IMG/VR virus record: IMGVR_UViG_3300024336_000005
Location: 1 to 64,000 of that record
Reading direction: 5' to 3' (one strand)
Length of the DNA: 64,000 nucleotides
Made by a program: the position numbers and the translations under genes. Positions 48,033-64,000 of the stretch are shown piece by piece (the stretch's first letter is position 1; each line of letters starts with the position of its first letter). The notes under the pieces are model-generated. The model had not been told where the DNA came from and did no database searches. It saw only the letters and a program-made list of their open reading frames with translations.

Positions 48033-51000
48033 TTAATTCCCTATATGGTGTTGAGTCCAATTTTCTGAATTCATCATCCTCTTACTCCAGCCGCGTGCAA
48101 TCCTATTGCCTTCCATAAGGCCTCGCCTTGTGCGCGTGCTGCGCTTCACTGTATTAATAACCCCGTCTATTCGGTATCCAGACCCAAAGTCTCCAATGTT
48201 TGCTTGCCTGTTGGCTTGGGCCCATCCGTGTCTGAGTCCCTCCTGAATTGTGGAATCATCACGTCCTCCCGCAGCCTGCATTGCAGAAAGCTCAGTATCT
48301 GGATTCCGAATTCTGTGGACAATGCTCGAGGCCCTAAAATTTCCAAATAGTCTTTCCAGATCTGTAAACGCATTGTGCGTAATCTTTCTTTTCGCTCCCT
48401 TCTGGATATTGTGAGCCGCGCGCCAACCAGCATCTGACCACATTCCAGTCTCAGATTCGACTGCTTCCTCCTGAGCTCTGTTAAAAGCACGCGCATCGAA
48501 TATTCTGTCTGAAGCCTTTCCAAAAGGTAGACTCGCCGCTGCCCCTTGGCGGACGAGCTGCAAGTTGAGGTTAACATTGTCATCGCCAAACAAAAGAGCG
48601 GGAGTACGACCATATGTAGATCCTGCGTTGGGATCGAAGACGGCAGTCATCGAGCTCTGTGAGGCCATTAGCTCTTCGAGCATCTCCGTTGCTCTCTCAC
48701 CATATGGCTGATCTTGGAATACTTTATTAGATGCATACGCATCACCATGGGAGACCTCGGGAGCATCAATGCCGGCTAGACGTAAGGACATAGTATTCCC
48801 ACCGCTAAGCATAAGCTTTACGGTGTCTGCATCTTCTATCTCATAGTCTGTGACCTTCTGCTGCCCTATCTGACCTTCATACCTCCTGTTCAAAGCATGG
48901 TCTAGCCCCTGCCAAGGGGAACCGAAGTCGGTCTTTTTGCTTCTGGTGGCGTCGGCAACACCCCCTCCGTGAGCCATGCCCTCCTCTGGATTTAGAGCGC
49001 GGTTGGAGCGGACCTGTCTCTCATAGAGAGTGCTAACAACCTGCTTGTCGCGCTTCAGTGCAGCCTCTTCTGATATCGCTCTGATCTGACGGCCGCCGCC
49101 CTCCTTCCTTACGATCTCACCATGACGCTTTCCTTTGCCTGTCCATTGTCCCAATGGACTCCCGTAGTCAATAATGCCAATGCGCTTGGCGCCTCTCTGG
49201 TCCGCAGTTAAGACAATGTTGCCAAAGTTGAGATCTCCATGACGCATCTGCTCGTGTAGTGTTGATACAGCTTCGTTTATGCGACCCAAGCCAACCTCTC
49301 TTAGCTCAGAAGGGGACAGGTCCTTCAAGGGAGACCCTTCAAAGTATTCCATGTCCATCTGTCCCTGGCGACCAGGACGGGCGGCATAAACATCTGGCCC
49401 AACTGAGGAGCTAGCCTTGCTTGTCAAGGCAACCTCTGATTTAGGAATTCTCCCGGCCTTACGAACAAAATTGAATGACTGGCCTCTGAAATAGCCCTCC
49501 ATGAGGTGAGCTTCGCCACTTGCTCCGGCACCAAGCCTCTTTACGCGAGTAGCAAGGGCGATGGCATCTTGGAAGCCAGGAGATCCTGTCATCTCAGCAA
49601 AGGTCTCTGCAGCTCTAGTCAATCCCCTGAGGGCATTCCAGCCAGAACCAAAGTCAGCAGTCTTCTTTCTTGCTGGCCCCTTAAAGCCTTCGTGCCTAAG
49701 TCCTTCGATGACGTTATAGGCATCATCCTTCCCAGAAATCTTTCCTGGCTCTATCTGCATCCCGGGATAATAGCCCTGAAACTTAGACATGCGCTGGTGA
49801 GCACGACCGGCGTCGGACATGTCAAGATATCTAACTTTTCCTGCAACAATATCATCTGCAGCAGCCTGTGTGTGCAATAGCCTCCCAGAGGATGCTTCTA
49901 TGACCGCTTGGTTGGCAGTCATGTCTGTCCCCTTGAAGAATGAGGGAAGGTCCTTTTGTATTTGCACATCAAAGAAGCTTTGATGCTTGGCCATTGCCCC
50001 ATATACCTTATCTAAGCCGATGTCTCCTGTAACAAGAAGGTCAATGTCCTTAGACTGTCTTGTCCATTCGGGACGAAGACTTGACACCAGATGCTCTCTG
50101 GCCACCCCTCCCTTAACATATAGATTGCCCCCCATTCCTGCAATCTCATCTGCCAATGCACCAACGCCAGCAATAGCAGCAGGGTTGTTCGGGTCTGATA
50201 GGCCCGCAGCCTCTGCGTTTGAGAATGCTGCAGATATGCCACCTTCTTCCTTTACAATCTTTGTTGGTCGTCCAATGTGCGACGGGTTATAATCCTCCGT
50301 CGAAACTCCTTTCAGAACTCTTACTTCAACTTCTCCCCTTAACCGGCGCGTTCCGCGCCGCAAGCCCTCAACCTTCTTTTGATGGAAAAAGTCTCTTAGA
50401 ACTCCGGTCGCGGAAAAGCCCTCCAACTCTCTCCTTTCTATGAAATCAGTTCGACTCAGGGTCACGGCGTCAGTCTTTGGATCGTAACTTCTGACAGCGT
50501 GCGGCTTGTCTGCGTGTCCGATTCTCGGCATCCGAAAATCTCTCGGCTTCATATCAGTCCGCAGAATCTTTTTTTCTGTGCTTTCGAATCGGATGCTTTG
50601 GTTACGAGTGTAGAGGTGTGCGCCCTCAGACATATCTAATTTAGAGAGCTCTTTTTCAGGTATAAAGAAGAAGGTGCTATCAGATACAGAGCTGTTTCCA
50701 GTAGCGGAACTTTTCGCGTACGCAGACAGAAGCTCCTCACGGCTCCCCTTTTGCATTCGGCTTCCGTAAACGCCAACACTCCCTGCTTCATTCAAAGCAT
50801 TGGAGCCTCCTGGAAGGAGTCGCTGCGTCTCGAGAATTGAATCGTGGGCGTAATTTGGAGCACCATGAGAGAACCCCGCTCCTAAATCTAAAGTGCTTTT
50901 TGGCGTCCATGTTTTTTCAGGCCCTGCGGCTCGTATATTAATCTTTTCTGCGGCTGCTTCGTATCGTTCAATTTCCGGTCTTGACTTCTTAAAGGCCGCC

Positions 51001-51869
51001 AGATTCTTTCTATAATTCCGCCCCCCTTTGCCCAAGAGCCCCTTTGCCGCCTTTAGCCCAAGACCTATCCCGGCTCCGCCGAGTGCAGCTGTAAGGGACG
51101 GGGTTATACTGCTATAGGCCGCCATTCCGCCGACCGCCGCGCCCCATCCAGCTCCTCCGCTGCCAATATATGAGAAAGCCCTGTCAAGATCTAGGAGGGG
51201 GATCTCTCTCCTTAGTTCTCCATATCCATATTTTTTGGTTCTTGACCAAAGGTCCTTAGCCTTGGTTAAGGCCCCCCTCCAACCAGAACCAAAGTCAGTA
51301 TTGTGCTTACGGGTTTGCCCAGCAAAACCCGCATGCTTCATTCCCTCTATATAGTTATATTCATCATCAGAACCAGAAAAGAGTAGCCCAACGCCAGCAA
51401 TAGCAGCTGCTCCTCCAGCTAGAAGTCTCCAGTTGCTTTTGATCCCACGCATGGCACGTGCGCTAGTGCCCTCTGGAGCCTCCTTAGCGGCTGTTGCAAC
51501 CGAGGCGGTAGGGTTGGATGGATTAGGGGCAGAAGCCCCCACAGAGGGGGCTGTAGGGGCAGCAAGGGCCATATCATCGGGGTGCCATGGCAGACTTGTC
51601 TCAGCGGTTGGAACATGAGGAACATGAGCCCATCCTCCTGGAGCTCTAGGGGCGTATACCTTGTGCTCTGGGGTGCCCCAAGCAGGAGCAGTTCCAGTGG
51701 TCTTATATATACTGTCTAGAACATCCCAAGCGGCCTGACCTCTTGCACCCTTTAGCTCGTCTGCAGAGAGTCCCCCCATGAGCTTAGAGACTCGCTTCGC
51801 ATGAGCGCCCAGATCATTAGAGGCATCCCAATTGGTTTTACCTGCTGCGAAGTCGTCTATGGCTGACAA
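48033..51869 (-). CDS. Multi-domain polyprotein: nucleotidyltransferase + Ser/Thr kinase + SNase nuclease, separated by repeated linkers
   Basis: NTase YVKGGVARE..KDIDLLV..DMTANQ; kinase LGAGASGEA..VRK..MEY..HGDLNFGNI..IIDYG; SNase DADTV..LRLAGIDAPE..QPYG..YGR..LVRQG..GMW; four EGxxH...DFGS repeats. Confidence 0.85.
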   Translation of the reverse strand: MSAIDDFAAGKTNWDASNDLGAHAKRVSKLMGGLSADELKGARGQAAWDVLDSIYKTTGTAPAWGTPEHKVYAPRAPGGWAHVPHVPTAETSLPWHPDDMALAAPTAPSVGASAPNPSNPTASVATAAKEAPEGTSARAMRGIKSNWRLLAGGAAAIAGVGLLFSGSDDEYNYIEGMKHAGFAGQTRKHNTDFGSGWRGALTKAKDLWSRTKKYGYGELRREIPLLDLDRAFSYIGSGGAGWGAAVGGMAAYSSITPSLTAALGGAGIGLGLKAAKGLLGKGGRNYRKNLAAFKKSRPEIERYEAAAEKINIRAAGPEKTWTPKSTLDLGAGFSHGAPNYAHDSILETQRLLPGGSNALNEAGSVGVYGSRMQKGSREELLSAYAKSSATGNSSVSDSTFFFIPEKELSKLDMSEGAHLYTRNQSIRFESTEKKILRTDMKPRDFRMPRIGHADKPHAVRSYDPKTDAVTLSRTDFIERRELEGFSATGVLRDFFHQKKVEGLRRGTRRLRGEVEVRVLKGVSTEDYNPSHIGRPTKIVKEEGGISAAFSNAEAAGLSDPNNPAAIAGVGALADEIAGMGGNLYVKGGVAREHLVSSLRPEWTRQSKDIDLLVTGDIGLDKVYGAMAKHQSFFDVQIQKDLPSFFKGTDMTANQAVIEASSGRLLHTQAAADDIVAGKVRYLDMSDAGRAHQRMSKFQGYYPGMQIEPGKISGKDDAYNVIEGLRHEGFKGPARKKTADFGSGWNALRGLTRAAETFAEMTGSPGFQDAIALATRVKRLGAGASGEAHLMEGYFRGQSFNFVRKAGRIPKSEVALTSKASSSVGPDVYAARPGRQGQMDMEYFEGSPLKDLSPSELREVGLGRINEAVSTLHEQMRHGDLNFGNIVLTADQRGAKRIGIIDYGSPLGQWTGKGKRHGEIVRKEGGGRQIRAISEEAALKRDKQVVSTLYERQVRSNRALNPEEGMAHGGGVADATRSKKTDFGSPWQGLDHALNRRYEGQIGQQKVTDYEIEDADTVKLMLSGGNTMSLRLAGIDAPEVSHGDAYASNKVFQDQPYGERATEMLEELMASQSSMTAVFDPNAGSTYGRTPALLFGDDNVNLNLQLVRQGAAASLPFGKASDRIFDARAFNRAQEEAVESETGMWSDAGWRAAHNIQKGAKRKITHNAFTDLERLFGNFRASSIVHRIRNPDTELSAMQAAGGRDDSTIQEGLRHGWAQANRQANIGDFGSGYRIDGVINTVKRSTRTRRGLMEGNRIARGWSKRMMNSENWTQHHIGN

Positions 51870-53061: not shown

Positions 53062-53482
53062 CTGTGCGGAGGGATCCTTGCTTTAATTCTTCTAGTTGCG
53101 CGGGTGAGAGATTCATCTCAATGATAGAAGAAGTCTTCTTGTCACCAGACTCTGGCGGGTCTGGTGCTATCCACTTAAAGGCCATGGAGACAAGTGCGGC
53201 GGCGATGAGAGAAGCGACAATAGATATGACCGCCCACTTCCCACTAAAGGTCGCGCCGGTGGTCTCTAGCTCCCTCAACCTCTTCTCTTGATCTACGTCC
53301 TTCGATTCCAATACGTTGACCTTTACTTTTAGTTTGGTCAACTCCTCGGGATGATAGCCTATCATCCTGCCCTTAAGTTCTTGTACGTCCCCGCTTATCT
53401 TTTCATAGTTATCATTTAATCTTTCTAGTTCTTTTAGCACATGGCGGGACCACTCATTCCACCCATTTTGATCATTGCTCAT
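53051..53482 (-). CDS. Coiled-coil + single transmembrane protein (holin/XhlA-like)
   Basis: Coiled coil ending EKRLRELE, then WAVISIVASLIAAALVSMAF. Confidence 0.45.
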   Translation of the reverse strand: MSNDQNGWNEWSRHVLKELERLNDNYEKISGDVQELKGRMIGYHPEELTKLKVKVNVLESKDVDQEKRLRELETTGATFSGKWAVISIVASLIAAALVSMAFKWIAPDPPESGDKKTSSIIEMNLSPAQLEELKQGSLRTVAS

Positions 53483-53946
53483 TGTAGATCTCCCCGCTGT
53501 TTTTTGCTATTAGGGCAAATTTGACAAGGAGAGGGCCAGAGGCGACCAAAGGTATAGGTCTCACTCTCGTCATGCCTGGACCAGCTAGTCCAAAGAACTG
53601 TAACGTACTCCCCTTCTTTAGTCCTCAGCCGATTAGAAGTCACAAAGTACCCCAACTCTTGTGGACTTCTTGCATGCATAACCCTTTCGATTTTTTCCCT
53701 ATCCTCAGGATGAATGATATCGGAGATAGACCTCCCTTTAATTTCACTCTTTGAATACCCCAGTTCACGCAAGGCCCTGGGGTTGCAGTCTTCTATGATC
53801 AAATCGTTGAAGATAAAGATCATGTCAGGACAAGAGTTGTAGAAGTCCTCGAGCTGAGAATTCCTCTTTGCCAACTCATCGTCCCTTCTGTTCAAAGCTA
53901 TCGTTAGCTTCTTCAGTTCGGTCAGTGTTTTCATGATTACATCCAA
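53479..53946 (-). CDS. Stand-alone PAS-domain protein
   Basis: FYNSCPDMIFIF..IEDCNPRALRELGYSKSEIKGRSISDIIHPEDR...NRLRTKEGEY. Confidence 0.85.
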   Translation of the reverse strand: MDVIMKTLTELKKLTIALNRRDDELAKRNSQLEDFYNSCPDMIFIFNDLIIEDCNPRALRELGYSKSEIKGRSISDIIHPEDREKIERVMHARSPQELGYFVTSNRLRTKEGEYVTVLWTSWSRHDESETYTFGRLWPSPCQICPNSKKQRGDLQ

Positions 53947-54009
53947 TAGGCGGGAGTACGGTTCAATAACAATAGAAAGCCCTTCCGGTGCGGGACGAGA
54001 ATGGGTTCT

Positions 54010-54113
54010 AAAAAAATATGGGAAAGGGAGGGAAATATAGGGGAAAAATAAGGGAAGGCTGAAGGATTGAATATAGAGGAAAATAGGGAAAACATAGGAA
54101 AAATAAGGGAGGA
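54010..54113 (+). repeat. Purine-rich degenerate tandem repeat at the strand switch
   Basis: GGAAAAATAAGGGA exact at 54042-54055 and 54097-54110, with related units around them; G4-type motif at 54020-54043. Confidence 0.7.
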
Positions 54114-54274
54114 CCTAGTGTAAGTGTTGGGAGTAGTAGGGTACCTATCGGTGCGAGCCCCTACCCCGACGACTTGGATAGCATGTTGCTATCACACTGG
54201 GCATAACGTCCAACAACCAGAGAAGTAGCAGGCATATCGTCTGTCTTCTCTATGCATGACTTAGGAGTTATATC

Positions 54275-55081
54275 ATGCAGTCCATCATCACCTCCATCAT
54301 CGCCCTGTCCGATCACCTGTACCACGCCCTCATCAACGCGATCGACACGCAGGATGCTGTGGCGCGCTGCTACGATGCGATCTGGTACTACCACGCACAG
54401 GTCCGCATCGACAACGGGCACAAGACCGAGACCTTCACCCGTGAGGGTGACAGCGTCATGCGTGAGGTGGTGTACAACGCCTCCATCATGGGCAAGGCCA
54501 GTCGCAAGCTGGCTGTCACCGGTCACGCGCAGGTGCTCATGGATGTGAGCAAGCTGTCCTTCACCCACACCTATGCTCGTGAGCCCCAGGCACACACGAG
54601 TCAGGTGAAGGTCACCATCGTGTACCCTGCGGCCAAGGCTGAGCCCACTGACCTCGAGGTGCGCCTCGCCTACGAGGAGTGGATGAACATCCAGGGCCAC
54701 CTGGAGCCCAAGGAGGAGGCCAAGGCTGAGGCTGATGCTGAGGTGGTGGAGGATGAGCACGTGGTGGAGGACTACTGGTACCTCATGGAGGACTACACCA
54801 AGGAGGATGCCCTCCACCTGGAGCGCAGCACGATGGGCAAGGACCGTAAGGCGTGGGATAGGCCCAACCGGGTGCTGGAGGTGGCCATGGAGGCACAGGC
54901 CAAGGCCCGTGAGGAGGAGGCAGAGGCCCTGTACCAGAGGGAGATGGCTGAGGCCAAGGCCCTCTGGGAGGCCAAGGTTGAGCTCTTCAAGAAGGTGAAG
55001 GGTGGCATGCCCAAGTACCCCCGAACCCACTATGGTAAGCCCATGCCTCGGGCCTACTGGAAGGAGGTGTTCGGGGGCTAG
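54275..55081 (+). CDS. Hypothetical early protein
   Basis: AGGAG RBS, strong GC3 bias. Confidence 0.8.
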   Translation: MQSIITSIIALSDHLYHALINAIDTQDAVARCYDAIWYYHAQVRIDNGHKTETFTREGDSVMREVVYNASIMGKASRKLAVTGHAQVLMDVSKLSFTHTYAREPQAHTSQVKVTIVYPAAKAEPTDLEVRLAYEEWMNIQGHLEPKEEAKAEADAEVVEDEHVVEDYWYLMEDYTKEDALHLERSTMGKDRKAWDRPNRVLEVAMEAQAKAREEEAEALYQREMAEAKALWEAKVELFKKVKGGMPKYPRTHYGKPMPRAYWKEVFGG

Positions 55082-55311
55082 GTAGCATAGGTATGGTGAC
55101 CCCTCTTCGGAGGGGGCTCCATATGGGTACATGTGGGGTGTATGGTGTATGCCATATGCTACTACGTGTACCCATATGGGGTACTGTATAGGTAGTAGGG
55201 TATAGCCCTGCTACTGGTACCACTGGGCATACCACATGGGGTGGTGTGCTATAGCAGGGGGGTGTATAGCCCGAGCCCCCCTCTGTGTATAGTAGGGCAT
55301 AGGGGTACTAT
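55082..55311 (+). other. Highly structured intergenic region
   Basis: CCCCTC-TTCG-GAGGGG; long stem CCATATGGGTAC..GTACCCATATGG; GTAGTAGGG..CCCTGCTAC. Confidence 0.55.
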
Positions 55312-55515
55312 ATGTACGTCATCAAGACCGAGTGGGCCCGCTACGTGCGAGGGACGTTGAGGGACGTTGAGGTGCGCCTCAGCGTCGTGACCCACGAGGA
55401 GGCCAAGCGGCTTCTCCGCACTGAGGTCCCCCTCGTGGGGAGGTCCCTCCAGGGGATCTCCTCCCATGTGGGGGACCGACTGAGCGTCCCCACCTGGACG
55501 CTGGTCAGCGAGTAA
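55312..55515 (+). CDS. Hypothetical early protein
   Basis: GC3 bias; AGGGG RBS. Confidence 0.65.
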   Translation: MYVIKTEWARYVRGTLRDVEVRLSVVTHEEAKRLLRTEVPLVGRSLQGISSHVGDRLSVPTWTLVSE

Positions 55516-55615
55516 GGTGATGGGGCACACGACTGTCGTGAGACAGCCGTGTGTTTAAACCACAGGACCGGTCCAAAGTCCGGTCCAAGCAGCCCCAAGG
55601 GGCATAGGAGTAGTC

Positions 55616-55801
55616 ATGATTGATTCCACCAAGCGGGTCACCCTCGATGAGGTGTTGGAGTTGTCGGGTGTGGAGGACCAGAGGGTCTTCGCCTGGGAGC
55701 AGTGGGTCGTCAAGGGCAAGGGGGTCCAGGTGACCCTGGACGTCGACTTCGACGAGAAGACCCACAAGTACAAGGAGATCCACATCTTCATCGGGCGTTA
55801 G
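55616..55801 (+). CDS. Hypothetical early protein
   Basis: AGGAG RBS, GC3 bias. Confidence 0.75.
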   Translation: MIDSTKRVTLDEVLELSGVEDQRVFAWEQWVVKGKGVQVTLDVDFDEKTHKYKEIHIFIGR

Positions 55802-55810
55802 CGCCCGATG

Positions 55811-55951
55811 AGCCCTTCCCCACCGGGCTAAAGGTGGGTGTTCCACATAGGCGCATCAGGGGTAACACCTTGGATGCGTCTTATATGGGGCATAGGCACA
55901 TGTTGTGCCACCCCTTGGTGCAGGTACGCACCATACACGCCCTATTGGGCA
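55811..55951 (+). ncRNA. Structured element family 2, copy 1 (pseudoknot plus conserved stems)
   Basis: Shares its architecture and 20-nt/16-nt blocks with 56270-56406. Confidence 0.55.
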
Positions 55952-55971
55952 CATTAGATAGGAGCTCACCC

Positions 55972-56247
55972 ATGAGCAAGTCCAACGTCGGCAACGAGAG
56001 CCAGTTCATCAACTTCGTTAATGGTTTGTGCGCGGGAAGCCTGTTGCAGTTCGCCATCATCGGCCTCCACACGGCCGCCTGGAAGAAGGACCAGCTGGGG
56101 ACTGCCAGGCTCCGGCAGTTGGGCCAGTACCACGATGACACCACCAGCCGGTTGATCCTCTCCAACGGCGTCGTCGTGGACGTGGATTGGGGCTTCCAAA
56201 AGGGGCAGTCCGCCCATCGCCTCTGGTGGCGCGTGCGCTCTAACTAG
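55972..56247 (+). CDS. Hypothetical early protein (start MSKSN)
   Basis: AGGAG RBS; the codon bias begins here rather than at 55702. Confidence 0.7.
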   Translation: MSKSNVGNESQFINFVNGLCAGSLLQFAIIGLHTAAWKKDQLGTARLRQLGQYHDDTTSRLILSNGVVVDVDWGFQKGQSAHRLWWRVRSN

Positions 56248-56269
56248 AGCAGCGCAGGCCGCCTGAATA

Positions 56270-56406
56270 AGCCCTCTCCCCCGTCGGGCTACAATAGACG
56301 GGGGATCACATGAGGACATCAGGGGTAGCACCTTGGCGTTCTGATGTGGTTTCTAGGGACATGCCGTCCCCATTGGGCAGTTTCGCCCATCACGCCCTAT
56401 TGGGCA
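56270..56406 (+). ncRNA. Structured element family 2, copy 2
   Basis: Covarying pseudoknot and conserved blocks. Confidence 0.55.
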
Positions 56407-56424
56407 TACATGAAAGGCCATACC

Positions 56425-57012
56425 ATGGCTACCTTCATTCGTTCCTCCCTCCTCCTCGCCCTCCTGTTCATCTGTGCCGGTTGCGGCACCAACCCGATGG
56501 CCTTCGGGCCGTTGGGGTGTTTCGTTTTCTCGTTCATCTTCCTCTTGGCGGGGCTGATGCCCACTAAGGCGGTGATCAAGGACGACGACGAGGAGACCGA
56601 GACGATGTCCTCCCCTGAGTGGGAGGTCCAGGAGTTCCCCGCTCTGGAGATCAAGGGGGAGGTGTGCTGGCCCGAGTGGCTGGAGATCTGCGAGGAGGCC
56701 TGGACCGAGCAGGCCAAGGCTGATGAGAACGCCCGTTTGGCGGCGTGGATCGAGCAGAGCAAGGCCACCATCAGGACCCGACAGGCCGAGTCCAAGCGGA
56801 TCGGCAACTGGATTGAGCAGCAGCGCATCAAGCGGTGGGTCGCGGCCCAGGAGGAGAAGGCCGCCAAGAAGGCGTGGAAGGACGCTGAGTACGCCCGCCG
56901 CTGCAAGGCGGCGCGTCAGGCCTGCGTGCTCGCCGAGCAGGAGGCGCAGGATGAACCCCTCCTGGAAGAGAGGATCGAGGAGTTCCGAAAGGAGATCCTC
57001 TCCTCCCTCTAG
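56425..57012 (+). CDS. Membrane protein with a lipoprotein-like/TM N-terminus and coiled-coil C-terminus (start MATFIR)
   Basis: GAAAGG RBS; LLLALLFICAGC and a second hydrophobic stretch. Confidence 0.7.
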   Translation: MATFIRSSLLLALLFICAGCGTNPMAFGPLGCFVFSFIFLLAGLMPTKAVIKDDDEETETMSSPEWEVQEFPALEIKGEVCWPEWLEICEEAWTEQAKADENARLAAWIEQSKATIRTRQAESKRIGNWIEQQRIKRWVAAQEEKAAKKAWKDAEYARRCKAARQACVLAEQEAQDEPLLEERIEEFRKEILSSL

Positions 57013-57147
57013 TTTAGAATCACGATTCGATAGTCGTCCTGAGAGCTGGGACGTTAAACTGCTCACATTAGCAGCAACCCATGGTGGGAAGCTGCTTAAC
57101 TGGGGTAGCCAATCCCCAAGCCCCGTGATGGGGTAAAGGAGTATACC

Positions 57148-58197
57148 GTGAAGAACATTGCCAAGAAGATTGGTTTCGTCTTGGGTGCCGCGATCGGCAT
57201 CATCATGTTGGCCGTGATCGCGAAGTTCGTGCTGGGCATCGTCCAGCACCTGGTCACCATGGCCCTCCTGGCCGGACCCCTCCTGTTCGCCTTCCCCGCC
57301 GCTCGGCGGCGGGTGTTGGTGCTGCTGAACAAGAAGGGCCAGAAGCTCAAGGAGGCCATCGAGGGGACGCCCGCCTGGAAGGGGCGGCAGGGCGTCAAGG
57401 ACGCCATCCAGGCGGGGCTTGAGAAGCAGTGGGAGTCGTTCAAGTCGGCCGCCAAGGCCGACGTGGAGGGGGAGGAGACCCAGGAGTTGTGCGACGGGTG
57501 CGGGAACATCCCGTTCTCCTGCTCCTGCGCGACGATGTCGCCGGAAGATGTGGCTGAGGCCGTCTGGCAGATGGAGGGGGAGCCTGCGCCCTGGCAGCCC
57601 ACCCTAATCGAGGGTGGGCTGGGGGAGGCCGTGGAGCTGTGCCCGGTCTTCGGGGTGGCCAAGCACTCGTGCGCCGGTTGTGACAACGGGCAGCACGAGG
57701 ACCCCAACTTCGTGGACGAGATGGTGGATGATGACGGCATCCCCGCACCGAAGGACGGTCAAGTGGCGTGCTCCACCTGTGGGTGGCCCCATGGGCCGAA
57801 TGGGTGTCGCAACTGTGACGACCCCATCTGCCTTGGCCGGGACGATGATATGTACGAGTACTGCGGCGGGTGTGGCGAGACTTTCGAGAGCTGCCACTGT
57901 TGTGGCGAGCATGAGGCGGTGAAGGTGGAGGTCAAGGTGGAGGAGAGGCAGTGCTCCTGTTGTGCCATCGAGGGCAACGCGAGGACGGAGGCGTACTGTT
58001 GGTTCCACTCCGAGCAGGAGCGGGAGGGGGCGCTCCTGTCGGTGGCGGAGGCCGAGGAGTTGGCCATCTGCGTGAAGGCCGCGCAGGACGCCGTGCGACT
58101 CCTGGACGACCGCTTGGAGTGGGCCGCCAAGGCCCACGCAGGGACCGACTTCGACGCCTGGTGGGCCTGCCGTCAGGGTTGGAAGGGGGAGAAGTGA
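57148..58197 (+). CDS. Membrane-anchored Cys-rich (multi zinc-finger-like) protein
   Basis: Two N-terminal TM segments; CDGC..CSC, CSTC..CRNC, CGGC..CHCC and other Cys clusters. Confidence 0.75.
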   Translation: MKNIAKKIGFVLGAAIGIIMLAVIAKFVLGIVQHLVTMALLAGPLLFAFPAARRRVLVLLNKKGQKLKEAIEGTPAWKGRQGVKDAIQAGLEKQWESFKSAAKADVEGEETQELCDGCGNIPFSCSCATMSPEDVAEAVWQMEGEPAPWQPTLIEGGLGEAVELCPVFGVAKHSCAGCDNGQHEDPNFVDEMVDDDGIPAPKDGQVACSTCGWPHGPNGCRNCDDPICLGRDDDMYEYCGGCGETFESCHCCGEHEAVKVEVKVEERQCSCCAIEGNARTEAYCWFHSEQEREGALLSVAEAEELAICVKAAQDAVRLLDDRLEWAAKAHAGTDFDAWWACRQGWKGEK

Positions 58198-58385
58198 GGA
58201 AGCTGAGCTGCGAGAAGGCGGTCAGGCTTTTGGCCTGTGCCTCCACGGTGGCTGGCTACTACGGGCCTATCCCGCCGGTCAAGCGGGATGAACTGGTTCA
58301 GGCCCTCGGGGTGACGCCCGAGGAGATCGATGCCTGGTGGAACAACCAGATGAGCATCGAGTGGGACGGCGCCTCCAAGCACTAG
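58194..58385 (+). CDS. Small HTH/homeodomain-like protein
   Basis: GTGA overlap start; KRDELVQALGVTPEEIDAWWNNQ. Confidence 0.55.
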   Translation: MRKLSCEKAVRLLACASTVAGYYGPIPPVKRDELVQALGVTPEEIDAWWNNQMSIEWDGASKH

Positions 58386-58668
58386 TCCCACAGCCGTACC
58401 TAGTCCGGCATTATAATAGACTAGGACTCCCTCCTGTTATCACGATCTCCTATCGTGGTATGAGAAGGGTGCTGAACAAGTGCCCTTACAATCTGTTCTC
58501 CATGGGTCATGGAGGGTCTAGTGTGTACCCAACACACTCCCTGGCTCTAGGGTTACCAAGAGCTAGTATGCACAACCCCGGCCAAAAACAGGGGGAGGAT
58601 AATGGCGTGTAACCGACGCTGCAAGTCCCGTATGGGACTGTTGCCCGAAAGGGCAGAAAGGCTCCAAC

Positions 58669-59649
58669 ATGAGCACCAAGAACTTCGACCTCGCTCAGAT
58701 CCTCGCCGATGTCACCAGCATCAACTTGGAGGCGCTGGTCGCCTCCAAGAAGGCCAAGGAGGAGGCCGAGAAGGTCGCCTCGAAGGAGGCCAAGAAGGCC
58801 AGGGAGGAGGCCGCCGCTTGGGCGGCGGCCAAGGCCGAGGAGAAGGCCAAGGAGGAGGCCGAGAAGCGGGCCGACCTGGCCCGCCTCAACCGGGAGGAGG
58901 CGGCCAGGAAGGAGGCCGCCAAGAAGGAGGCCATGAAGGCCCGCGCGCGGCTGGAGCACAGCTCCTACAGGCTCGGGCTGCTGGAGGGCCGGGTGGCCCT
59001 CCTGAGTCAGATCCAGGAGAACCTGGGGCGCAAGCTCCAGGGTATGCTGGAGGGGACGGCGGCCCAGCTGGCCGCCAAGGCCGAGGAGTTCCAGGCGGCG
59101 CGGGAGGACCTGATGGAGGCGACCAAGCGCCTCCAGGAGGAGAAGGACCTGGTGGAGGATCAGCGGATCTCCTTCGGGGAGGTGCTCCCCTTGCCCCGCC
59201 ACCAGGAGGCCGGCCGTCGGGCCGCGCGGGTCGAAGGGGGCGGGGCCCTGAAGGAGATCCAGGAGGAGGCCTTCTTCGCGGCCATCGAGGCCAAGAAGGA
59301 GGCCAAGGTGGCGCAGGCCATCGAGGCCTCCGAGGAGCTGGAGGGGCTGCTGGCTCAGCTGTCCAGCCGGCCCCGGCGCTCCATCACCCGCGCCCTGAGC
59401 CGGGGGGACATCTCCCCCGCCAAGGCCGTGGAGGAGGCGAAGGCCGCCATCGAGGCGGCCAAGCGGGTCCACCAGTTCGAAAAGGTGGAGGTGGTGACGA
59501 CCAAGGTCGGCAGGGCCTCCACCTTGAGGGACCAGGACGCGGCCATCCGGATGGCCGCAAAGGGTAAGAAGCTCTCCAAGGAGGAGGGCAAGAGCTCCAA
59601 CCCGAAGAAGATTGCGAAGCTGCGCCGTAAGGCCGCGCAGAAGAAGTAA
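58669..59649 (+). CDS. Ala/Glu/Lys-rich coiled-coil protein with a basic tail
   Basis: GAAAGG RBS, GC3 bias. Confidence 0.8.
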   Translation: MSTKNFDLAQILADVTSINLEALVASKKAKEEAEKVASKEAKKAREEAAAWAAAKAEEKAKEEAEKRADLARLNREEAARKEAAKKEAMKARARLEHSSYRLGLLEGRVALLSQIQENLGRKLQGMLEGTAAQLAAKAEEFQAAREDLMEATKRLQEEKDLVEDQRISFGEVLPLPRHQEAGRRAARVEGGGALKEIQEEAFFAAIEAKKEAKVAQAIEASEELEGLLAQLSSRPRRSITRALSRGDISPAKAVEEAKAAIEAAKRVHQFEKVEVVTTKVGRASTLRDQDAAIRMAAKGKKLSKEEGKSSNPKKIAKLRRKAAQKK

Positions 59650-59658
59650 TCTTCTCTC

Positions 59659-59827
59659 TTGCCCCGCTGAATAAGCGGGGCGGTCCCCCTCGTGGGATCT
59701 AGGCTCATCACATAGGTGGTGGTCCTAGACGTCACGAGGGTAGCCGAATAGGTTGCCTCATGACAGGTGGCGCTGAACAAGCGCCGCCGCTTAGCTTTGT
59801 GCTGAATAAGCGCAGAGCTTTACATTT
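59659..59827 (+). ncRNA. Structured element family 1, copy A (four boxB-like hairpins and one long stem)
   Basis: Aligns with 60791-60964 with compensatory and G-U changes. Confidence 0.65.
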
Positions 59828-59985
59828 GGAAGCGCCCACCACCGGGGCGCATTAGTAAAATACCGGGGTTAGCGTTGCTAGAGCGCTAATTAAATGGCTT
59901 GCGTTGTGAGCCGCTGGCAAGGGGATACTCCCCACAACGGAGCAATCATGCTCCACTTTGGTCGCAAGACCTGAAAGGCCACATC

Positions 59986-60783
59986 ATGGCCATCTTCAAC
60001 ACCATCAAGTCCTCCGCCTCCGCCACCGCCGAGAAGGGCTTGCTCGCCCTCGGGCGGGCCAGCTGCAGCCTCAACCTCCGGAGCCCCATGCTCCGGAAGT
60101 TGAACGCAGCGCCCTTGATGGCGGTGGCGCCCTCGCACATGCGGGGGGCGTGTGAGGAGCACATGGAGCGCATGAACAAGCGCTCCATGGAGGCCTGGGA
60201 GCAGGACTCCCTCGTGGGTATGGCGACTTACATCGCCGAGAACCCGGAGCCCCGGAAGGAGCTGGAGGACTGGATGGCCTTCGCCTGCCGGGTGGCCGCC
60301 TACCGGGCGGCCCAGGTGGGCGACGTCACCCAGGCGCTCGCCGGGATGGCTTCCCGTGCAGGGCTGAGCCGCACGACGGCCAACCTCTGGGGCAAGACGC
60401 GGGGTCTTGATGACTTCGCCGATGCCCTGGAGGCCCACGCAACCGTGGGCGACTGCAAGTGGTGCCAGCCGCACCCCTGTGGTTGCCACGCCAAGGCGGG
60501 CACGTGCCGCACTTGCGACATCACCATCTTCAGCGACAACCGGGGGTACGACCGGTCCATCTGCGTGCACTGCGATGAGGACCGCGTCCGCATCGAGGCC
60601 GACGTCGAGGCGTGGCTGGAGATGGCCCAGGAGAGGTTCAGCTCCTCCTCGGCCCTGAGCGTGGGGGAGCAGCGGGAGTGGATGGAGATGATGGTGAACA
60701 CCTTCATCCCCGGCCAGGTGGTGTTCACCTGGAGCGAGACGGTGGAGACGGGGGACGTCTACGAGGGTCCCATCCCCTTCTGA
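59986..60783 (+). CDS. Hypothetical protein with Cys clusters (start MAIFN)
   Basis: GAAAGG RBS; CKWC..CGC, CRTC, CVHC; acidic C-terminus ending IPF. Confidence 0.75.
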   Translation: MAIFNTIKSSASATAEKGLLALGRASCSLNLRSPMLRKLNAAPLMAVAPSHMRGACEEHMERMNKRSMEAWEQDSLVGMATYIAENPEPRKELEDWMAFACRVAAYRAAQVGDVTQALAGMASRAGLSRTTANLWGKTRGLDDFADALEAHATVGDCKWCQPHPCGCHAKAGTCRTCDITIFSDNRGYDRSICVHCDEDRVRIEADVEAWLEMAQERFSSSSALSVGEQREWMEMMVNTFIPGQVVFTWSETVETGDVYEGPIPF

Positions 60784-60790
60784 TAGTATT

Positions 60791-60964
60791 TTGCCCCGCT
60801 GAATAAGCGGGGCGGGCTTAGCTCTTGCTGAGCTCTAGACTCATCCCTACGGGGGTGGCTCTAGACATTAGCAAGAGCCGCTGTGTAAGCGGTAGTAGCT
60901 GATGGTTGTGGCGCTGAGCAAGCGCCACTTTGGAGCCTTGCTGAATAAGCAGGGCTTTACATTT
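60791..60964 (+). ncRNA. Structured element family 1, copy B
   Basis: Same order of stems as copy A; both end in GCTTTACATTT. Confidence 0.65.
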
Positions 60965-61157
60965 TGTGCCATGGGTCATGGCCGGCTTGGACTACCGTTT
61001 AGTCCAGGGCTTTGGTGGAGTAGCCCTAAACACTCCACCCTCATGATACTGAGGTAGTATCAAACCTCTAACCGTAGGTAACGGTAAGTTGGTATTTATT
61101 ATGTCCCCCGCTTGGTAAGCGGGTGCCAACGGACACAATCCTCGAAAGGGATTTACC

Positions 61158-64000
61158 ATGAGCAACAAGAACTTCGACTTCAACGCCAGCATCGTCAACC
61201 TCGCCAACCAGGAGGGTCTCCAGCCGGAGGCGTTGCTGGCCTTCGCCAACGGGGAGGGTCGCGACCTCTCCCGGATCAACGGGGGCAACTTCGCTCCCTA
61301 CAGCCGGGCGCTGTTGGTGCGCTTCCAGAAGGCCCAGGAGGAGGCCAAGGTGAACCAGGAGAAGGAGGACGGGGCGCTCAGCGTCATCCTGGCCAGCTGC
61401 CTGGAGCTCCCGGTGGGCGAGACCGTCGGTGAGAAGGCCTTGGCCTACGTCCGCAAGGAGGTGGGTGAGACCTGGACCAAGGCGTCCGTGATGGAGGCCT
61501 TGAAGAAGAAGGAGGCGGAACTCCACGCGGCCCAGAAGGAGCAGGAGGAGCTGTTGTGGGACCTCCACCGCAAGGCCCTGAAGGCGCACGTCGCCGAGAT
61601 CAAGGTCGATGCGAAGGATGGCCTGATCGATTGGCGCCACCTGTCGAAGGCCCTCGGTCGGATGATCGGCGACCGCGTGGTGAGCGAAGACTACGCCGCT
61701 GAGCTGGACCTCGCGGCCAACGTAGACATCGATGCCTTCAACAACTTGATCGATGCCATGAATGTCCTGCTGAAGGGACAGAAGATCTCCGAGGGGGAAG
61801 GGAAGGAGATCATCATGGCCGTCCGAAAGGGCACCGATCTGGCCGTCGCGGTGGGTCGGGTGTTGGAGAAGTGCAAGAACAAGGAGGAGGTCACTGAGGA
61901 GGAGGCCGTCATCGTGGAGGGGCTGGGTGCCAAGATCGACGCCCAGCGGGAGCAGGAGAAGAACCTGCAGCTCGACAAGGAGCTGGCGCCCAAGTGGTTC
62001 GACGCCTTGACCGACGAGGAGTGGAAGGCGATGAAGCACGCCCGCTTCGCGGCCATCCAGGAGACGGAGGAAGAGCTGGTCACCCGGATGCGGGCGCAGG
62101 AGTACGCCTTCGGGACGAGCGTGAAGATGGCCAAGATCATCTTCAACCTGGAGGTGACCGGGGTGGAGAGCTGGAAGCAGCTGATGCCCTACTACACCGA
62201 CGAGAACTTCGATGCTCAAATGGTGAGCATCGACGAGGGGCTGACCAAGTGGGACGCCCTGGAGACCACGAAGAAGGCCGCCAAGAAGGCCCAGAAGGAG
62301 CAGGACGTGAAGACCGACATCGAGACCCAGGTGGAGACGGCGATCAACGAGGGAAGCACCCTCACGGCGGAGGAGAAGGCGGAGGTCATGGAGAGCGAGC
62401 ACGACGAGAACAATCGGCTCCAGGTGGAGCTGTTCGAGAAGGAGCAGGCCGCCGAGAAGGCGGAGGCGCGGGAGAAGCTCGCCCGCATGCTGCGGGCGGC
62501 GTTGGGCCAGGGGTACATCACGAAGGAGGAGATGGCCGGGACGCTGAAGATGGCGGATGAGAAGGCGGTCGCCGAAGAGGTGGTCGAAGTCATGAAGAAG
62601 GCGGTCGACCGCCTCAACGAGTTGGCCAACGAGCGCAAGGCGCTCAAGGCCACCAAGACCGACGAGGAGACCTCCATGGAGGAGCAGATGCGCTGCATCC
62701 CCCGAGACCAGAAGAAGAACTTCTGGCACGCCGTGTGGACGGCGCTGCCGGAGGGCAGCGCGAAGGAGCAGGCCAAGAGGGTCCGCTCCGGGGTGAAGCG
62801 GAACGGCAGCCTGGGCGTCAAGCCCACCGCTGCCACCATGGTGGAGATCCAGAAGCTGGGGGCCGATTGGGTCACCAGCACCATCAAGAACCTGGGCGTC
62901 AAGACGACGCCCGTGAAGAAGGAGGCCCCCGTGGCCAAGCCCATCGAGACCGAGACCGTGACCACCCCCGTGATGGAGGAGAAGAAGATGAAGACGGCGA
63001 TCGAAAAGGCGATGGAGAAGACGGAGATGAAGGAAGAGGCCCCCACCGTGGAGGTGGCGATCAAGGAGGAGGCGGGCAGCACCGCCCGGCTGAACCAGAT
63101 GCTGGCCGAAAAGGTGGAGACGCTGGAGGAGCTCAGGGAGCTGGCCAAGGAGGCCGGACACGGCCGCATCGAGGCCAAGGCCTCGGCGGCGCTGCTGGCG
63201 GCGGAGCTCAAGATCGCCAAGGAGGCGCTCAACGAGGAGGGCACCGTGGGTGAGCCCACGGTCGAGTGCAAGGCGGGTCCCACCGTCGAGGCGGGTGAGC
63301 CCTGCCCGGTGGAGCCCAAGACCGATGAGCCCGAGATGGGCCGCATCGAGAAGGTCAGGCTGTGGTGGAAGGAGGCCGACTTCCTCGCCATGGCCAAGGA
63401 CTACAAGGAGCGGGCCATGAAGAAGGCCATGTGCCACCGGGAGCGGGTGGCGACGACCATGAAGCAGGACCGCAAGACCTACGAGGTCGCGGTGATGGGC
63501 TTCGAGCAGGCGCGCATCGCGGTTCACGCGGACAAGCACGTCCTGCTGCTGGGCCTGCTGGTCCGCAAGGGGAAGGCCGGCAAGCTGGCCCTCAAGTACA
63601 ACGAGGGCGACCTCGCCCTCAACATCACCGATGAGGAGAAGGCCGCACTGGCCAAGACCCTCTTGGGGATGACGAAGGACGACGCCAACGGCGCCTCCCA
63701 CGCCCTGCCGGGCATCAGCCTCTCCAAGGTGAACCGCGAGGAGATCGCGGCCAAGTGGGTGGAGAAGGCCATCGCGGGCTGGGAGAAGCTCGACATCGGC
63801 AAGAAGGCGTACATCCTCTGCCAGATGGAGGGGCGCACCAGCGTCTCCGTGGGGATGTTCAAGCCCGTGCGGACCGTGTACAACGCCCTGCGTGGTGGAG
63901 CGGTGTGGACCTGGGACCACTCGGGTGGTTGGGTGCTCTCCAAGGTGGACACGATCCGCCTGAAGCGGATCGTCAAGGGGCAGACCAGCCTGGCCAAGAA
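61158..64000 (+). CDS. Large early protein, >940 aa, runs off the window (absent from the ORF track)
   Basis: MSNKNFDFNASIVNLANQEG... is open to the window end, with strong GC3 bias; E/K/A-rich and helical. Confidence 0.85.
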   Translation, partial: MSNKNFDFNASIVNLANQEGLQPEALLAFANGEGRDLSRINGGNFAPYSRALLVRFQKAQEEAKVNQEKEDGALSVILASCLELPVGETVGEKALAYVRKEVGETWTKASVMEALKKKEAELHAAQKEQEELLWDLHRKALKAHVAEIKVDAKDGLIDWRHLSKALGRMIGDRVVSEDYAAELDLAANVDIDAFNNLIDAMNVLLKGQKISEGEGKEIIMAVRKGTDLAVAVGRVLEKCKNKEEVTEEEAVIVEGLGAKIDAQREQEKNLQLDKELAPKWFDALTDEEWKAMKHARFAAIQETEEELVTRMRAQEYAFGTSVKMAKIIFNLEVTGVESWKQLMPYYTDENFDAQMVSIDEGLTKWDALETTKKAAKKAQKEQDVKTDIETQVETAINEGSTLTAEEKAEVMESEHDENNRLQVELFEKEQAAEKAEAREKLARMLRAALGQGYITKEEMAGTLKMADEKAVAEEVVEVMKKAVDRLNELANERKALKATKTDEETSMEEQMRCIPRDQKKNFWHAVWTALPEGSAKEQAKRVRSGVKRNGSLGVKPTAATMVEIQKLGADWVTSTIKNLGVKTTPVKKEAPVAKPIETETVTTPVMEEKKMKTAIEKAMEKTEMKEEAPTVEVAIKEEAGSTARLNQMLAEKVETLEELRELAKEAGHGRIEAKASAALLAAELKIAKEALNEEGTVGEPTVECKAGPTVEAGEPCPVEPKTDEPEMGRIEKVRLWWKEADFLAMAKDYKERAMKKAMCHRERVATTMKQDRKTYEVAVMGFEQARIAVHADKHVLLLGLLVRKGKAGKLALKYNEGDLALNITDEEKAALAKTLLGMTKDDANGASHALPGISLSKVNREEIAAKWVEKAIAGWEKLDIGKKAYILCQMEGRTSVSVGMFKPVRTVYNALRGGAVWTWDHSGGWVLSKVDTIRLKRIVKGQTSLAK

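What the first reader, a model, noticed from the sequence alone, without database searches (positions are those of the whole stretch)
59659..60964. Duplicated ~170-nt covarying RNA structure with arrays of boxB-like GNRNA pentaloop hairpins
Two intergenic regions (59659-59827 and 60791-60964) share one layout. First an identical GCCCCGCT-GAATA-AGCGGGGC hairpin. Then a long stem whose outer helix is completely swapped (CCCTCGTG/CACGAGGG vs GCTCTTGCTG/TAGCAAGAGC) around TCTAG/CTAGA and CATCnC-loop-GnGGTG; one loop is cUACGg. Then three more hairpins and GCTTTACATTT. Loops are GAATA, GAACA, GAGCA and GTGTA, all G-N-R-N-A and mostly closed by CU/AG. Established knowledge: lambda boxB (GCCCU-GAAAA-AGGGC) and P22 boxB (GCGCU-GACAA-AGCGC) have this form. 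G-U wobbles favour a + strand RNA structure. Inference: a multivalent antitermination or protein-binding element, or an unknown ncRNA. An alternative is hairpin DNA promoters for the virion RNAP, as in N4.
Basis: partly seen in the sequence, partly recalled or inferred. Interest (0 to 1): 0.82.

Follow-up and report, generated by a model that had tools for sequence, protein, structure and literature searches.

The report
Duplicated boxB-like hairpin module between phage genes
Two spacers between genes of an uncultured 204-kb phage carry the same five-hairpin RNA module, four hairpins capped like lambda boxB; it probably marks where the transcript ends, is cut or is read through, but no relative or experiment confirms this.

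Summary
Copy A (59659-59827) and copy B (60791-60964) share one layout:
- a hairpin lying in a 25-nt stretch that is identical in both copies;
- a 22-bp interrupted helix with a conserved core and an unalignable but still complementary outer helix;
- three more hairpins;
- an unpaired GCUUUACAUUU.

Of 59 aligned pairs, 35 are identical, 10 change on one side, 12 change on both sides and 2 break. The + strand folds 18-27 kcal/mol better than the - strand, so this is an RNA structure in the sense transcript.

Nine hairpins in three adjacent spacers carry GNRNA pentaloops. Seven have the apex GCU-GARYA-AG, which matches the form lambda N prefers.

Nothing else of a nut site is present: no boxA and no arginine-rich N-like protein. 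No sigma-70 promoter and no N4-type RNA polymerase were found either.

The module occurs only in this phage. All flanking proteins are ORFans. A related phage has the same GC3-rich ORFan arm with long, predicted-structured spacers, but different modules.

My best reading (about 0.4) is a punctuation module that ends or cuts the transcript and that a protein recognising the capped hairpins controls. The main rival (about 0.3) is passive processing and stabilisation with no specific binder. It is a new variant of a known kind, of moderate interest.

The parts
59659..59827 (+). Copy A of the module. It starts 11 nt after the stop codon of the 326-aa gene (58669-59649).
   Evidence: -95.0 kcal/mol, z -7.85
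60791..60964 (+). Copy B of the module. It starts 9 nt after the stop codon of the 265-aa gene (59986-60783).
   Evidence: -102.9 kcal/mol, z -9.81
59661..59681 (+). h1A: 8-bp stem with a U-GAAUA-A cap. It lies in a 25-nt stretch identical to copy B.
60793..60813 (+). h1B: identical to h1A.
59687..59740 (+). H2A: long interrupted helix. Outer helix 59687-59695/59732-59740, middle UCUAGG/CCUAGA, inner UCAUCAC/GUGGUGG, loop AUAG.
60822..60877 (+). H2B: same core as H2A with two compensatory pair changes, an outer helix of unrelated sequence and a UACG loop. A competing local fold is 3 kcal/mol lower.
59739..59757 (+). h3A: GGUAGCC-GAAUA-GGUUGCC, with two G-U pairs.
60877..60893 (+). h3B: GCCGCU-GUGUA-AGCGGU.
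59766..59788 (+). h4A: 9-bp stem with a U-GAACA-A cap.
60908..60928 (+). h4B: 8-bp stem with a U-GAGCA-A cap.
59793..59819 (+). h5A: 11-bp stem with a U-GAAUA-A cap. The consensus scan flags it as terminator-like.
60931..60959 (+). h5B: 12-bp stem with a U-GAAUA-A cap. The consensus scan flags it as terminator-like.
59817..59827 (+). Conserved GCUUUACAUUU. Its 3' part is the only U-rich unpaired stretch of copy A. Similarity between A and B ends here.
60954..60964 (+). The same 11-mer in copy B.
58465..58514 (+). Partial third copy in the preceding spacer. It has an h5-like hairpin (U-GAACA-A cap), CUUACAAU, then a CCAUGGGUCAUGG hairpin that recurs after copy B at 60968-60982.
61107..61123 (+). 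A further hairpin with the same GCU/AGC apex pairs but a UGGUA loop, in the 5' leader of the 1188-aa gene.

Best explanation
The two copies are cis-acting RNA modules in the sense transcript of a co-directional operon of ORFan genes. Each begins about 10 nt after a stop codon. Each has five hairpins and ends at the only U-rich unpaired stretch, UUUACAUUU, directly after the last hairpin. About 160-190 nt of unrelated, hairpin-rich leader follow before the next start codon.

I read the module as transcript punctuation. The RNA is ended or cut here, through one or more of three routes:
- the terminator-like hairpin h5 with its U-rich tail;
- an RNase III-type cut in the 22-bp helix H2;
- an RNase E-type cut in the AU-rich stretch.

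The four hairpins with the invariant U-GNRNA-A cap would be handles for a sequence-specific RNA-binding protein. As N does at boxB, that protein would decide whether RNA polymerase or the transcript goes on to the next gene. This would give delayed expression of the three distal genes (326, 265 and 1188 aa).

Shown here: the sequence, the fold, the co-variation, the strand, the position and the restricted distribution. Inferred: termination or cleavage at this point, protein binding, and any coupling between the two.
For: - **Strand and structure.** The + strand folds 18-27 kcal/mol better than the - strand, with z-scores of -7.9 and -9.8. There are 12 compensatory and 10 one-sided pair changes in 59 pairs.
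- **Selection on the apex.** The apex GCU-GNRNA-AG(C) is nearly invariant over ten hairpins while their stems are swapped. That points to selection on the loop, not only on pairing.
- **Fit to boxB.** The loop form and the U-A closure are what lambda N prefers (PMC12027372). They belong to a solved GNRA-like pentaloop class (PMC9830547).
- **Distribution.** Long-stem GNRNA hairpins cluster in three consecutive spacers. Nine lie in 58465-60959, against a scatter of short-stem matches elsewhere in 71 kb.
- **A boundary.** h5A and h5B are flagged terminator-like. Similarity between A and B stops exactly at the conserved 11-mer. The partial third copy keeps just h5 plus UUACAAU.
- **Need for read-through.** No sigma-70-type promoter lies on the + strand anywhere in the arm. 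Distal genes therefore need read-through or processing of a long transcript.
- **Cleavage in the same operon.** A Twister-P5 ribozyme (50.7 bits, threshold 37.6) sits directly after a stop codon in another spacer. Cleavage between cistrons is therefore likely part of this operon's expression.
Against: - Only two full copies exist, both in one genome. There are no homologues, so the statistics rest on paralogues.
- No boxA-like sequence lies near the hairpins.
- No neighbouring protein has a clear arginine-rich motif.
- The U-tract is interrupted and weak. In the third copy it is hardly U-rich at all.
- The exact h1 hairpin occurs in 15 unrelated bacterial genomes, about two thirds of them with a T-run directly or 1-2 nt after it, i.e. 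as ordinary terminators. This cap may simply be a favoured stable cap that needs no dedicated binder.
- The related phage has an equivalent arm without any such hairpins.
Confidence: 0.4

Rival explanations
1. Passive processing and stabilisation. H2 is an RNase III substrate, as between the early genes of T7. The AU-rich stretch is an RNase E site. The other hairpins only block exonucleases and protect the new ends. No specific binder of the loops exists; the shared cap is just a very stable cap inherited by duplication.
For: - H2 is about 22 bp with internal loops.
- Most other spacers of the arm also hold one long irregular hairpin, up to about 30 bp in 55116-55186.
- One spacer holds a twister ribozyme instead.
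- All spacers fold far better than shuffled sequence.
- The same h1 hairpin serves as a plain terminator stem in many bacteria.
- The related phage has structured spacers without the cap.
Against: - The apex is invariant while the stems diverged completely.
- Other hairpins in the same spacers use many other loops, so stability alone does not explain four identical caps per module.
- RNase III and RNase E cleavage cannot be predicted from sequence.
Confidence: 0.3
2. A stand-alone or 3'-UTR-derived small RNA. Its repeated identical loops would titrate or recruit a protein, by analogy with multi-hairpin sponge RNAs. It would not control its own transcript.
For: - It is a discrete ~170-nt unit with sharp borders. 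It begins just after a stop codon and ends with a terminator-like hairpin.
- It has four identical caps per unit.
Against: - There is no promoter of its own.
- It matches no Rfam family.
- There are only two copies and no conservation beyond this phage.
Confidence: 0.12
3. DNA-level regulatory cassettes like the PeSL terminator/promoter units of T4-type phages. A stem-loop plus a promoter (TTTACA as -35 or TACATT as -10) would precede each ORFan gene and would also serve as recombination points for gene shuffling.
For: - The arm consists of ORFans and is hyperplastic. A 2.2-kb, two-gene indel separates otherwise 99.9% identical strains of the related phage.
- Modules are repeated between different genes.
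- PeSLs of the PST/T4 pair use TTTACW as their -35 element (PMC4122927).
Against: - The scan finds no sigma-70 promoter on the + strand in the arm.
- By direct reading, neither TTTACA as -35 nor TACATT as -10 has a partner hexamer at 16-18 nt in all copies.
- The distance from the loop to TTACA varies from 5 to 9 nt and tracks stem length.
- The G-U asymmetry points to RNA.
- The strain indel junction lies inside coding sequence, not at a spacer module.
Confidence: 0.1
4. N4-type hairpin DNA promoters for a virion RNA polymerase.
For: The only support is the general idea of hairpins upstream of genes in a large phage.
Against: - N4 promoters need a 5-7 bp stem and a 3-nt loop on the template strand (PMC4496689).
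- Here the loops are 5 nt and the stems 6-12 bp. The template strand carries A-C mismatches and folds 18-27 kcal/mol worse.
- No RNA polymerase-like protein was detected in the window.
Confidence: 0.03

Closest known systems
Lambda and P22 nut sites (boxB hairpin bound by N protein; processive antitermination)
   Same: - A hairpin with a GNRNA pentaloop closed by U-A then C-G. CUGAAUAAG here compares with CUGAA(A/G)AAG in lambda (lambda sequence from my own knowledge).
- h4A differs from P22 boxB, as recalled, only at loop positions 3-4.
- It lies in the sense transcript of an early-type operon, between genes and upstream of a terminator-like hairpin.
   Different: - There are four capped hairpins per site instead of one.
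- There is no boxA.
- No N-like arginine-rich protein was found nearby.
- The last capped hairpin is itself the terminator-like one.
- The phage is an uncultured 204-kb contractile-tailed phage, not a lambdoid.
RNase III processing sites between the early genes of T7
   Same: - A family of paralogous, interrupted helices of about 20-25 bp lies between cistrons of one long transcript.
- The neighbouring hairpins would be left at the new 3' ends.
   Different: - Cleavage is untested.
- The module carries four extra capped hairpins and a conserved single-stranded 11-mer, which T7 sites lack.
PeSL promoter/terminator cassettes of T4-type phages (PMC2839356, PMC4122927)
   Same: - Short repeated regulatory modules sit between ORFan genes in a hyperplastic genome region.
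- They contain a stem-loop and a TTTAC-like motif.
   Different: - PeSLs are about 50-70 bp DNA-level units with a recognisable sigma-70 promoter.
- Here there is no such promoter. The unit is 170 nt and shows RNA-strand asymmetry with compensatory changes.
Intrinsic terminators and REP-like extragenic hairpin clusters of bacteria
   Same: - The exact h1 hairpin is found in bacteria, about two thirds of the time with a T-run directly or 1-2 nt after it and sometimes an A-run before it.
- A cluster of similar hairpins occurs between convergent genes in metagenome locus L018.
   Different: - h1, h3 and h4 have no U-tract.
- The hairpins form a fixed, ordered five-part module.

Membership tests
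Lambda-type nut site | boxB: a short hairpin with a GNRNA pentaloop closed by U-A | tested here: met
   There are nine GNRNA hairpins, and seven have the apex GCU-GARYA-AG. The criteria come from PMC12027372.
Lambda-type nut site | boxA (CGCUCUUA-like) close to boxB on the same RNA | tested here: not met
   YGCTCTTW with up to 1 mismatch has no + strand match in 59650-59985 or 60784-61157, and window-wide counts are at chance level. AGCUCUUG in copy B has 2 mismatches and is absent from copy A.
Lambda-type nut site | A cognate N-like protein with an arginine-rich motif | tested here: inconclusive
   No Pfam or PHROGs hit for any protein of the arm. The densest arginine stretch is 5 R in 18 aa, internal to the 326-aa protein. 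About 133 kb of the genome was not examined.
Lambda-type nut site | Read-through of downstream terminators depends on the site | not testable with these tools
   Only a weak terminator-like h5 with a UUACAUUU tail was found.
RNase III processing site (T7 early type) | An interrupted helix of about 20 bp or more between cistrons | tested here: met
   H2 has 9+6+7 bp in copy A and 10+6+7 bp in copy B, with 2x2 and 1x1 internal loops.
RNase III processing site (T7 early type) | Cleavage by RNase III | not testable with these tools
   No tool here can test cleavage.
N4 virion-RNAP hairpin promoter | A 5-7 bp stem with a 3-nt loop formed on the template strand | tested here: not met
   The loops are 5 nt and the stems 6-12 bp. 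The template strand folds 18-27 kcal/mol worse. The criteria come from PMC4496689.
N4 virion-RNAP hairpin promoter | A giant virion RNA polymerase gene | tested here: not met
   The 2025-, 1823- and 1270-aa ORFs have no Pfam or PDB RNA polymerase match and give only weak tail-protein leads. This covers the window only.
PeSL cassette | A stem-loop joined to a sigma-70-type early promoter | tested here: not met
   The scan finds no promoter-like site on the + strand in 53900-64000.
Intrinsic terminator | A GC-rich hairpin directly followed by a U-tract | tested here: inconclusive
   h5A and h5B pass a lenient scan, with 5-6 U in the tail. h1, h3 and h4 have no U-tract.
Any Rfam family | A score at or above the gathering threshold | tested here: not met
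   The only hit in the window is Twister-P5 at 55516-55583. Nothing matches in the two modules even at E<=1.

The most novel reading that the evidence does not exclude
The module would be a new class of multivalent, boxB-like RNA control site. It would belong to a conserved expression platform in one lineage of large phages: a divergently transcribed arm with extreme GC3 that carries fast-turnover ORFan cargo genes. The genes are separated by long spacers predicted to fold stably, which hold lineage-specific duplicated RNA modules or a self-cleaving ribozyme. An undiscovered phage RNA-binding protein would read the four capped hairpins to time expression of the distal cargo genes.
Probability: 0.2. 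Interest if true: 0.8.

Novelty: new variant of a known kind. Interest (0 to 1): 0.55.

Why it matters
If the capped hairpins are read by a protein, this would be the first boxB-type system outside lambdoid phages, to my knowledge. It would also be multivalent, in a large uncultured phage. Such a system would offer a new orthogonal RNA-protein pair and a model for timing gene expression along a long operon.

Even on the passive reading, the arm is unusual. It has about 95% GC at third codon positions next to a 50% GC genome. It contains only ORFan genes. Every spacer is 100-370 nt long and predicted to fold stably. One spacer holds a twister ribozyme.

A second phage shares this design but none of the arm's proteins or modules. 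That suggests a conserved platform for expressing hypervariable genes.

Tried and rejected
**Search for relatives of the module: all negative**
- The window is bases 1-64000 of IMG/VR contig 3300024336_000005. A second IMG/VR contig and two ENA contigs are identical over this region, so they add no variation.
- GenBank phages by blastn gave only a low-complexity coding match.
- IMG/VR scans for the h1 21-mer, the H2 core and h5 plus the 11-mer found only this phage.
- A two-hairpin pattern in IMG/VR and in metagenomes returned only coding repeats, tandem palindromes or a REP-like cluster.
- A covariance model built from A and B found nothing else in 124 kb of this phage and its relative.

**Protein routes to relatives**
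- The 265-, 326- and 1188-aa proteins match only themselves in the 5.8-billion and 1.84-billion protein libraries.
- The 1278-aa SNase-domain protein led to a related phage. Its arm has no homologous protein and no A/B-like module.

**Ideas tested and dropped**
- Sigma-70 promoter reading of TTTACA or TACATT: rejected. There is no partner hexamer and the scan is negative.
- Bacteroidota -7 box reading (TAnnTTTG): it fits copy A exactly. I rejected it because copy B and the third copy do not fit, and because genes on both arms have clear Shine-Dalgarno sites.
- CRISPR-repeat mimic: no Rfam CRISPR-DR hit in the modules.
- Small ORFs starting at 59760 and 60902: not followed up. They have no ribosome-binding site, the two copies are read in different frames, and there is no GC3 signal.
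- CTAG enrichment in the spacers is only about 2-fold, so I did not pursue it.
- A crude G-T versus A-C count over all weak hairpins was not significant (36 against 25). The asymmetry is clear only in the strong hairpins and in the fold energies.

Full report
**Setting**

The window is bases 1-64000 of a 204-kb uncultured phage contig, IMG/VR 3300024336_000005. Contigs identical over this region occur in a second IMG/VR record and in two ENA assemblies.

Bases 1-53950 carry minus-strand structural genes at about 50% GC. These include large terminase, portal, tail sheath and three giant ORFs with tail-like leads.

From 54275 a divergent plus-strand arm runs to window-equivalent 64724. It has ten genes, 62-66% GC and 80-100% GC at third codon positions. 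None of its proteins has a Pfam hit. One has a marginal PHROGs hit at E=0.0013. The three I searched match only themselves in the protein libraries.

The spacers of this arm are 100-374 nt long at 51-59% GC. Predicted fold energies run from -0.33 to -0.54 kcal/mol per nt. The three I compared with shuffled sequence gave z-scores of -5 to -10. One spacer, directly after a stop codon, is a Twister-P5 ribozyme (55516-55583; 50.7 bits against a threshold of 37.6).

**The observation**

Copy A begins 11 nt after the stop codon of the 326-aa gene. Copy B begins 9 nt after the stop codon of the 265-aa gene. Each copy contains, in order:

- **h1.** An 8-bp stem with a U-GAAUA-A cap, lying in 25 nt that are identical between the copies.
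- **H2.** An interrupted helix of about 22 bp. Its middle (UCUAG/CUAGA) and inner (UCAUCNC/GNGGUGG) parts are conserved apart from two compensatory pair changes. Its outer 9-10 bp are unrelated in sequence yet complementary in both copies.
- **h3, h4, h5.** Three further hairpins with loops GAAUA/GUGUA, GAACA/GAGCA and GAAUA/GAAUA.
- **The 11-mer.** GCUUUACAUUU, which occurs nowhere else in the window. Alignable similarity ends there.

Pair by pair, 35 of 59 pairs are unchanged, 10 change on one side, 12 change on both sides and 2 are lost at helix ends.

The modules fold at -95.0 and -102.9 kcal/mol (z -7.85 and -9.81). Their reverse complements fold at -76.8 and -75.8 kcal/mol. The helices contain about 15 G-U pairs and essentially no A-C mismatches. 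The structure therefore belongs to the + strand, which is the mRNA sense.

In copy B a competing local fold is 3 kcal/mol more stable than the fold homologous to copy A. I treat this as within model error, but it is a caveat.

**The hairpin family**

A scan of 71 kb for GNRNA loops on stems of at least 5 bp finds about what chance gives overall: 49 against 31 +/- 6. The long-stem cases, however, are concentrated. Nine lie in 58465-60959.

I aligned ten hairpins on their loops. Among the nine distinct sequences, the apical pair C-G is invariant, G-C is kept apart from G-U in two, and U-A is kept in all but one. G1 of the loop is kept in nine of the ten hairpins and its last A in all ten. Seven of the nine stem pairs show changes on both sides. 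Since I chose these hairpins for being hairpins, the informative point is the contrast between the fixed apex and the free stem.

The apex fits published boxB criteria. Lambda N prefers GNRNA with a closing U-A pair. U7 and G8 are most critical, and loop position 3 must be a purine (PMC12027372). U-GARYA-A is also a solved GNRA-like pentaloop class with the fourth base flipped out (PMC9830547).

A partial third copy lies one spacer upstream, at 58465-58514. It has an h5-like hairpin, CUUACAAU, then a CCAUGGGUCAUGG hairpin that recurs right after copy B. A stemless CUGAAUAAG sits in the spacer at 56263.

**What it is not**

- *Not a sigma-70 promoter.* The scan finds none on the + strand in the arm. 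By reading, TTTACA and TACATT lack partner hexamers at the right spacing in all copies.
- *Not an N4-type promoter.* The loop size, stem length and strand are all wrong. No RNA polymerase-like protein was seen.
- *No boxA*.
- *No obvious arginine-rich N-like protein* among the neighbours.
- *No Rfam match*.

**Relatives**

The module is confined to this phage.

The exact h1 hairpin does occur in 15 unrelated bacterial genomes, about two thirds of them with a T-run directly or 1-2 nt after it, i.e. as plain intrinsic terminators. This cap on a GC stem is therefore a commonly used stable hairpin. That weakens the argument that the cap must have a dedicated binder.

Through the 1278-aa SNase-domain protein I found a related phage, with 47% identity over part of that protein and a 49%-identical neighbouring protein. 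It has the same design: a divergent arm with GC3 of 0.66-0.90 beside a gene with GC3 of 0.41, and spacers of 120-330 nt predicted to fold at -0.28 to -0.41 kcal/mol per nt. None of its arm proteins matches ours. It has no twister and no A/B-like module.

It does have its own duplicated module with swapped stems. It also shares three short co-linear motifs with the window's spacer at 57013-57147. Two strains of it differ by a 2.2-kb, two-gene indel. Duplicated structured spacer modules thus look like a recurrent, fast-evolving feature of this type of arm.

**Mechanism**

The data fix an RNA-level, sense-strand, cis-located element with a sharp 3' border at the only U-rich single-stranded stretch. 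I favour transcript punctuation under protein control, at about 0.4. Four points support it:

- h5 plus UUACAUUU is terminator-like.
- H2 has the size and shape of an RNase III site.
- The same operon uses a ribozyme between two other cistrons.
- The invariant boxB-type caps suggest a reader protein that would decide read-through to the three distal genes.

The main rival, at about 0.3, is the same processing and stabilisation without any specific reader. The bacterial terminator matches and the cap-free related phage support this rival. A 3'-UTR-derived RNA or protein sponge (0.12), PeSL-like DNA cassettes (0.10) and N4-like promoters (0.03) follow.

**Verdict**

The structural part of the interpretation (RNA, boxB-like form) holds. 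The functional part (antitermination) is untested and lacks the other defining parts of a nut site. It is a new variant of known kinds of phage RNA control or processing sites. Interest is moderate because everything rests on two paralogues in one uncultured genome.

Noticed in passing
window 55516-55583 (+): A Twister-P5 self-cleaving ribozyme (50.7 bits against a threshold of 37.6) starts on the base after the stop codon of a 67-aa gene, 33 nt before the next start codon.
   Followed up: partly
window 54275-64000, continuing to L008:14553: A 10.4-kb plus-strand arm has 62-66% GC and 80-100% GC3, next to a 50% GC genome. All ten proteins are ORFans, and the spacers are only 51-59% GC. A related phage (L249:1-7646) shows the same contrast (GC3 0.66-0.90 against 0.41) with entirely different proteins.
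   Followed up: partly
window 54199, 55225, 55295, 55600, 55888, 56402 (+): GGGCATA occurs six times on the + strand of the window. All six lie in the first five spacers of the arm, and two of them sit 16-17 nt before start codons as GGGCATAGG. This could be a second spacer motif class, a promoter or a processing signal.
   Followed up: no
window 55116-55186 (+): A near-perfect hairpin of about 30 bp with many G-U pairs. The spacer folds at -124.5 kcal/mol on the + strand and -79.1 on the - strand. It looks like an ideal double-strand-specific RNase substrate.
   Followed up: no
window 55854-55873 / 56317-56336 and 55936-55951 / 56391-56406: Two adjacent spacers share two other modules, CATCAGGGGTARCACCTTGG and CACGCCCTATTGGGCA. 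This is a second family of duplicated spacer elements.
   Followed up: no
window 56281-56305 and 58399-58425: Two hairpins have similar loops (GGCTACAATA and CGGCATTATAATA) on swapped stems (CCCCCGTC/GACGGGGG and CCTAGTC/GACTAGG). The loops contain TACAAT or TATAAT.
   Followed up: no
window 54014-54103: Purine-rich repeats with an 11-nt period (AAATATAGGG / AGGGAAAAATA) lie in the divergent region between the two arms. This could be a promoter, bending or origin region.
   Followed up: no
window 57013-57147 vs L249 3909-3898, 3367-3356, 3309-3299: This spacer shares three co-linear 11-12-mers with spacers of the related phage. They include a hairpin plus UUAAAC, and a GCCCC-loop-GGGGUAAAG hairpin just before the ribosome-binding site of a membrane-protein gene. 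This is the only spacer similarity seen between the two phages.
   Followed up: partly
L249:6051-6185 (-) and L252:993-1125 (-): The related phage has its own duplicated leader module: a conserved CGGUACAUGCCUC, a stem swapped between the copies around a fixed 14-nt loop GCAGGCUGAAAUAG, and a long-range GCGGG/CCCCGC helix.
   Followed up: partly
L249:3784-5995 vs L252: A 2.2-kb, two-gene indel separates otherwise 99.9% identical strains. Its junction is an 11-bp repeat inside the 5' ends of two genes, so the arm is hyperplastic.
   Followed up: partly
window 57148-58197 and 59986-60783: Two arm proteins (349 and 265 aa) are rich in CxxC pairs, which suggests zinc-ribbon-like domains. The 349-aa protein also has an N-terminal membrane segment.
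   Followed up: no
window 58669 and 61158: The genes after the third copy and after copy B begin alike, MSTKNFDL and MSNKNFDF. The similarity is weak (14 of 28 residues, E=0.13).
   Followed up: partly
window 53479-53946 (-) and 48033-51869 (-): The phage encodes a PAS-domain protein (155 aa) and a 1278-aa protein with a staphylococcal-nuclease domain. In the related phage the homologue also carries weak protein-kinase hits.
   Followed up: no
L234-L248: The exact 21-nt h1 hairpin occurs in 15 bacterial genomes from many phyla. In about two thirds of them a T-run follows directly or after 1-2 nt, as in intrinsic terminators, some bidirectional.
   Followed up: yes
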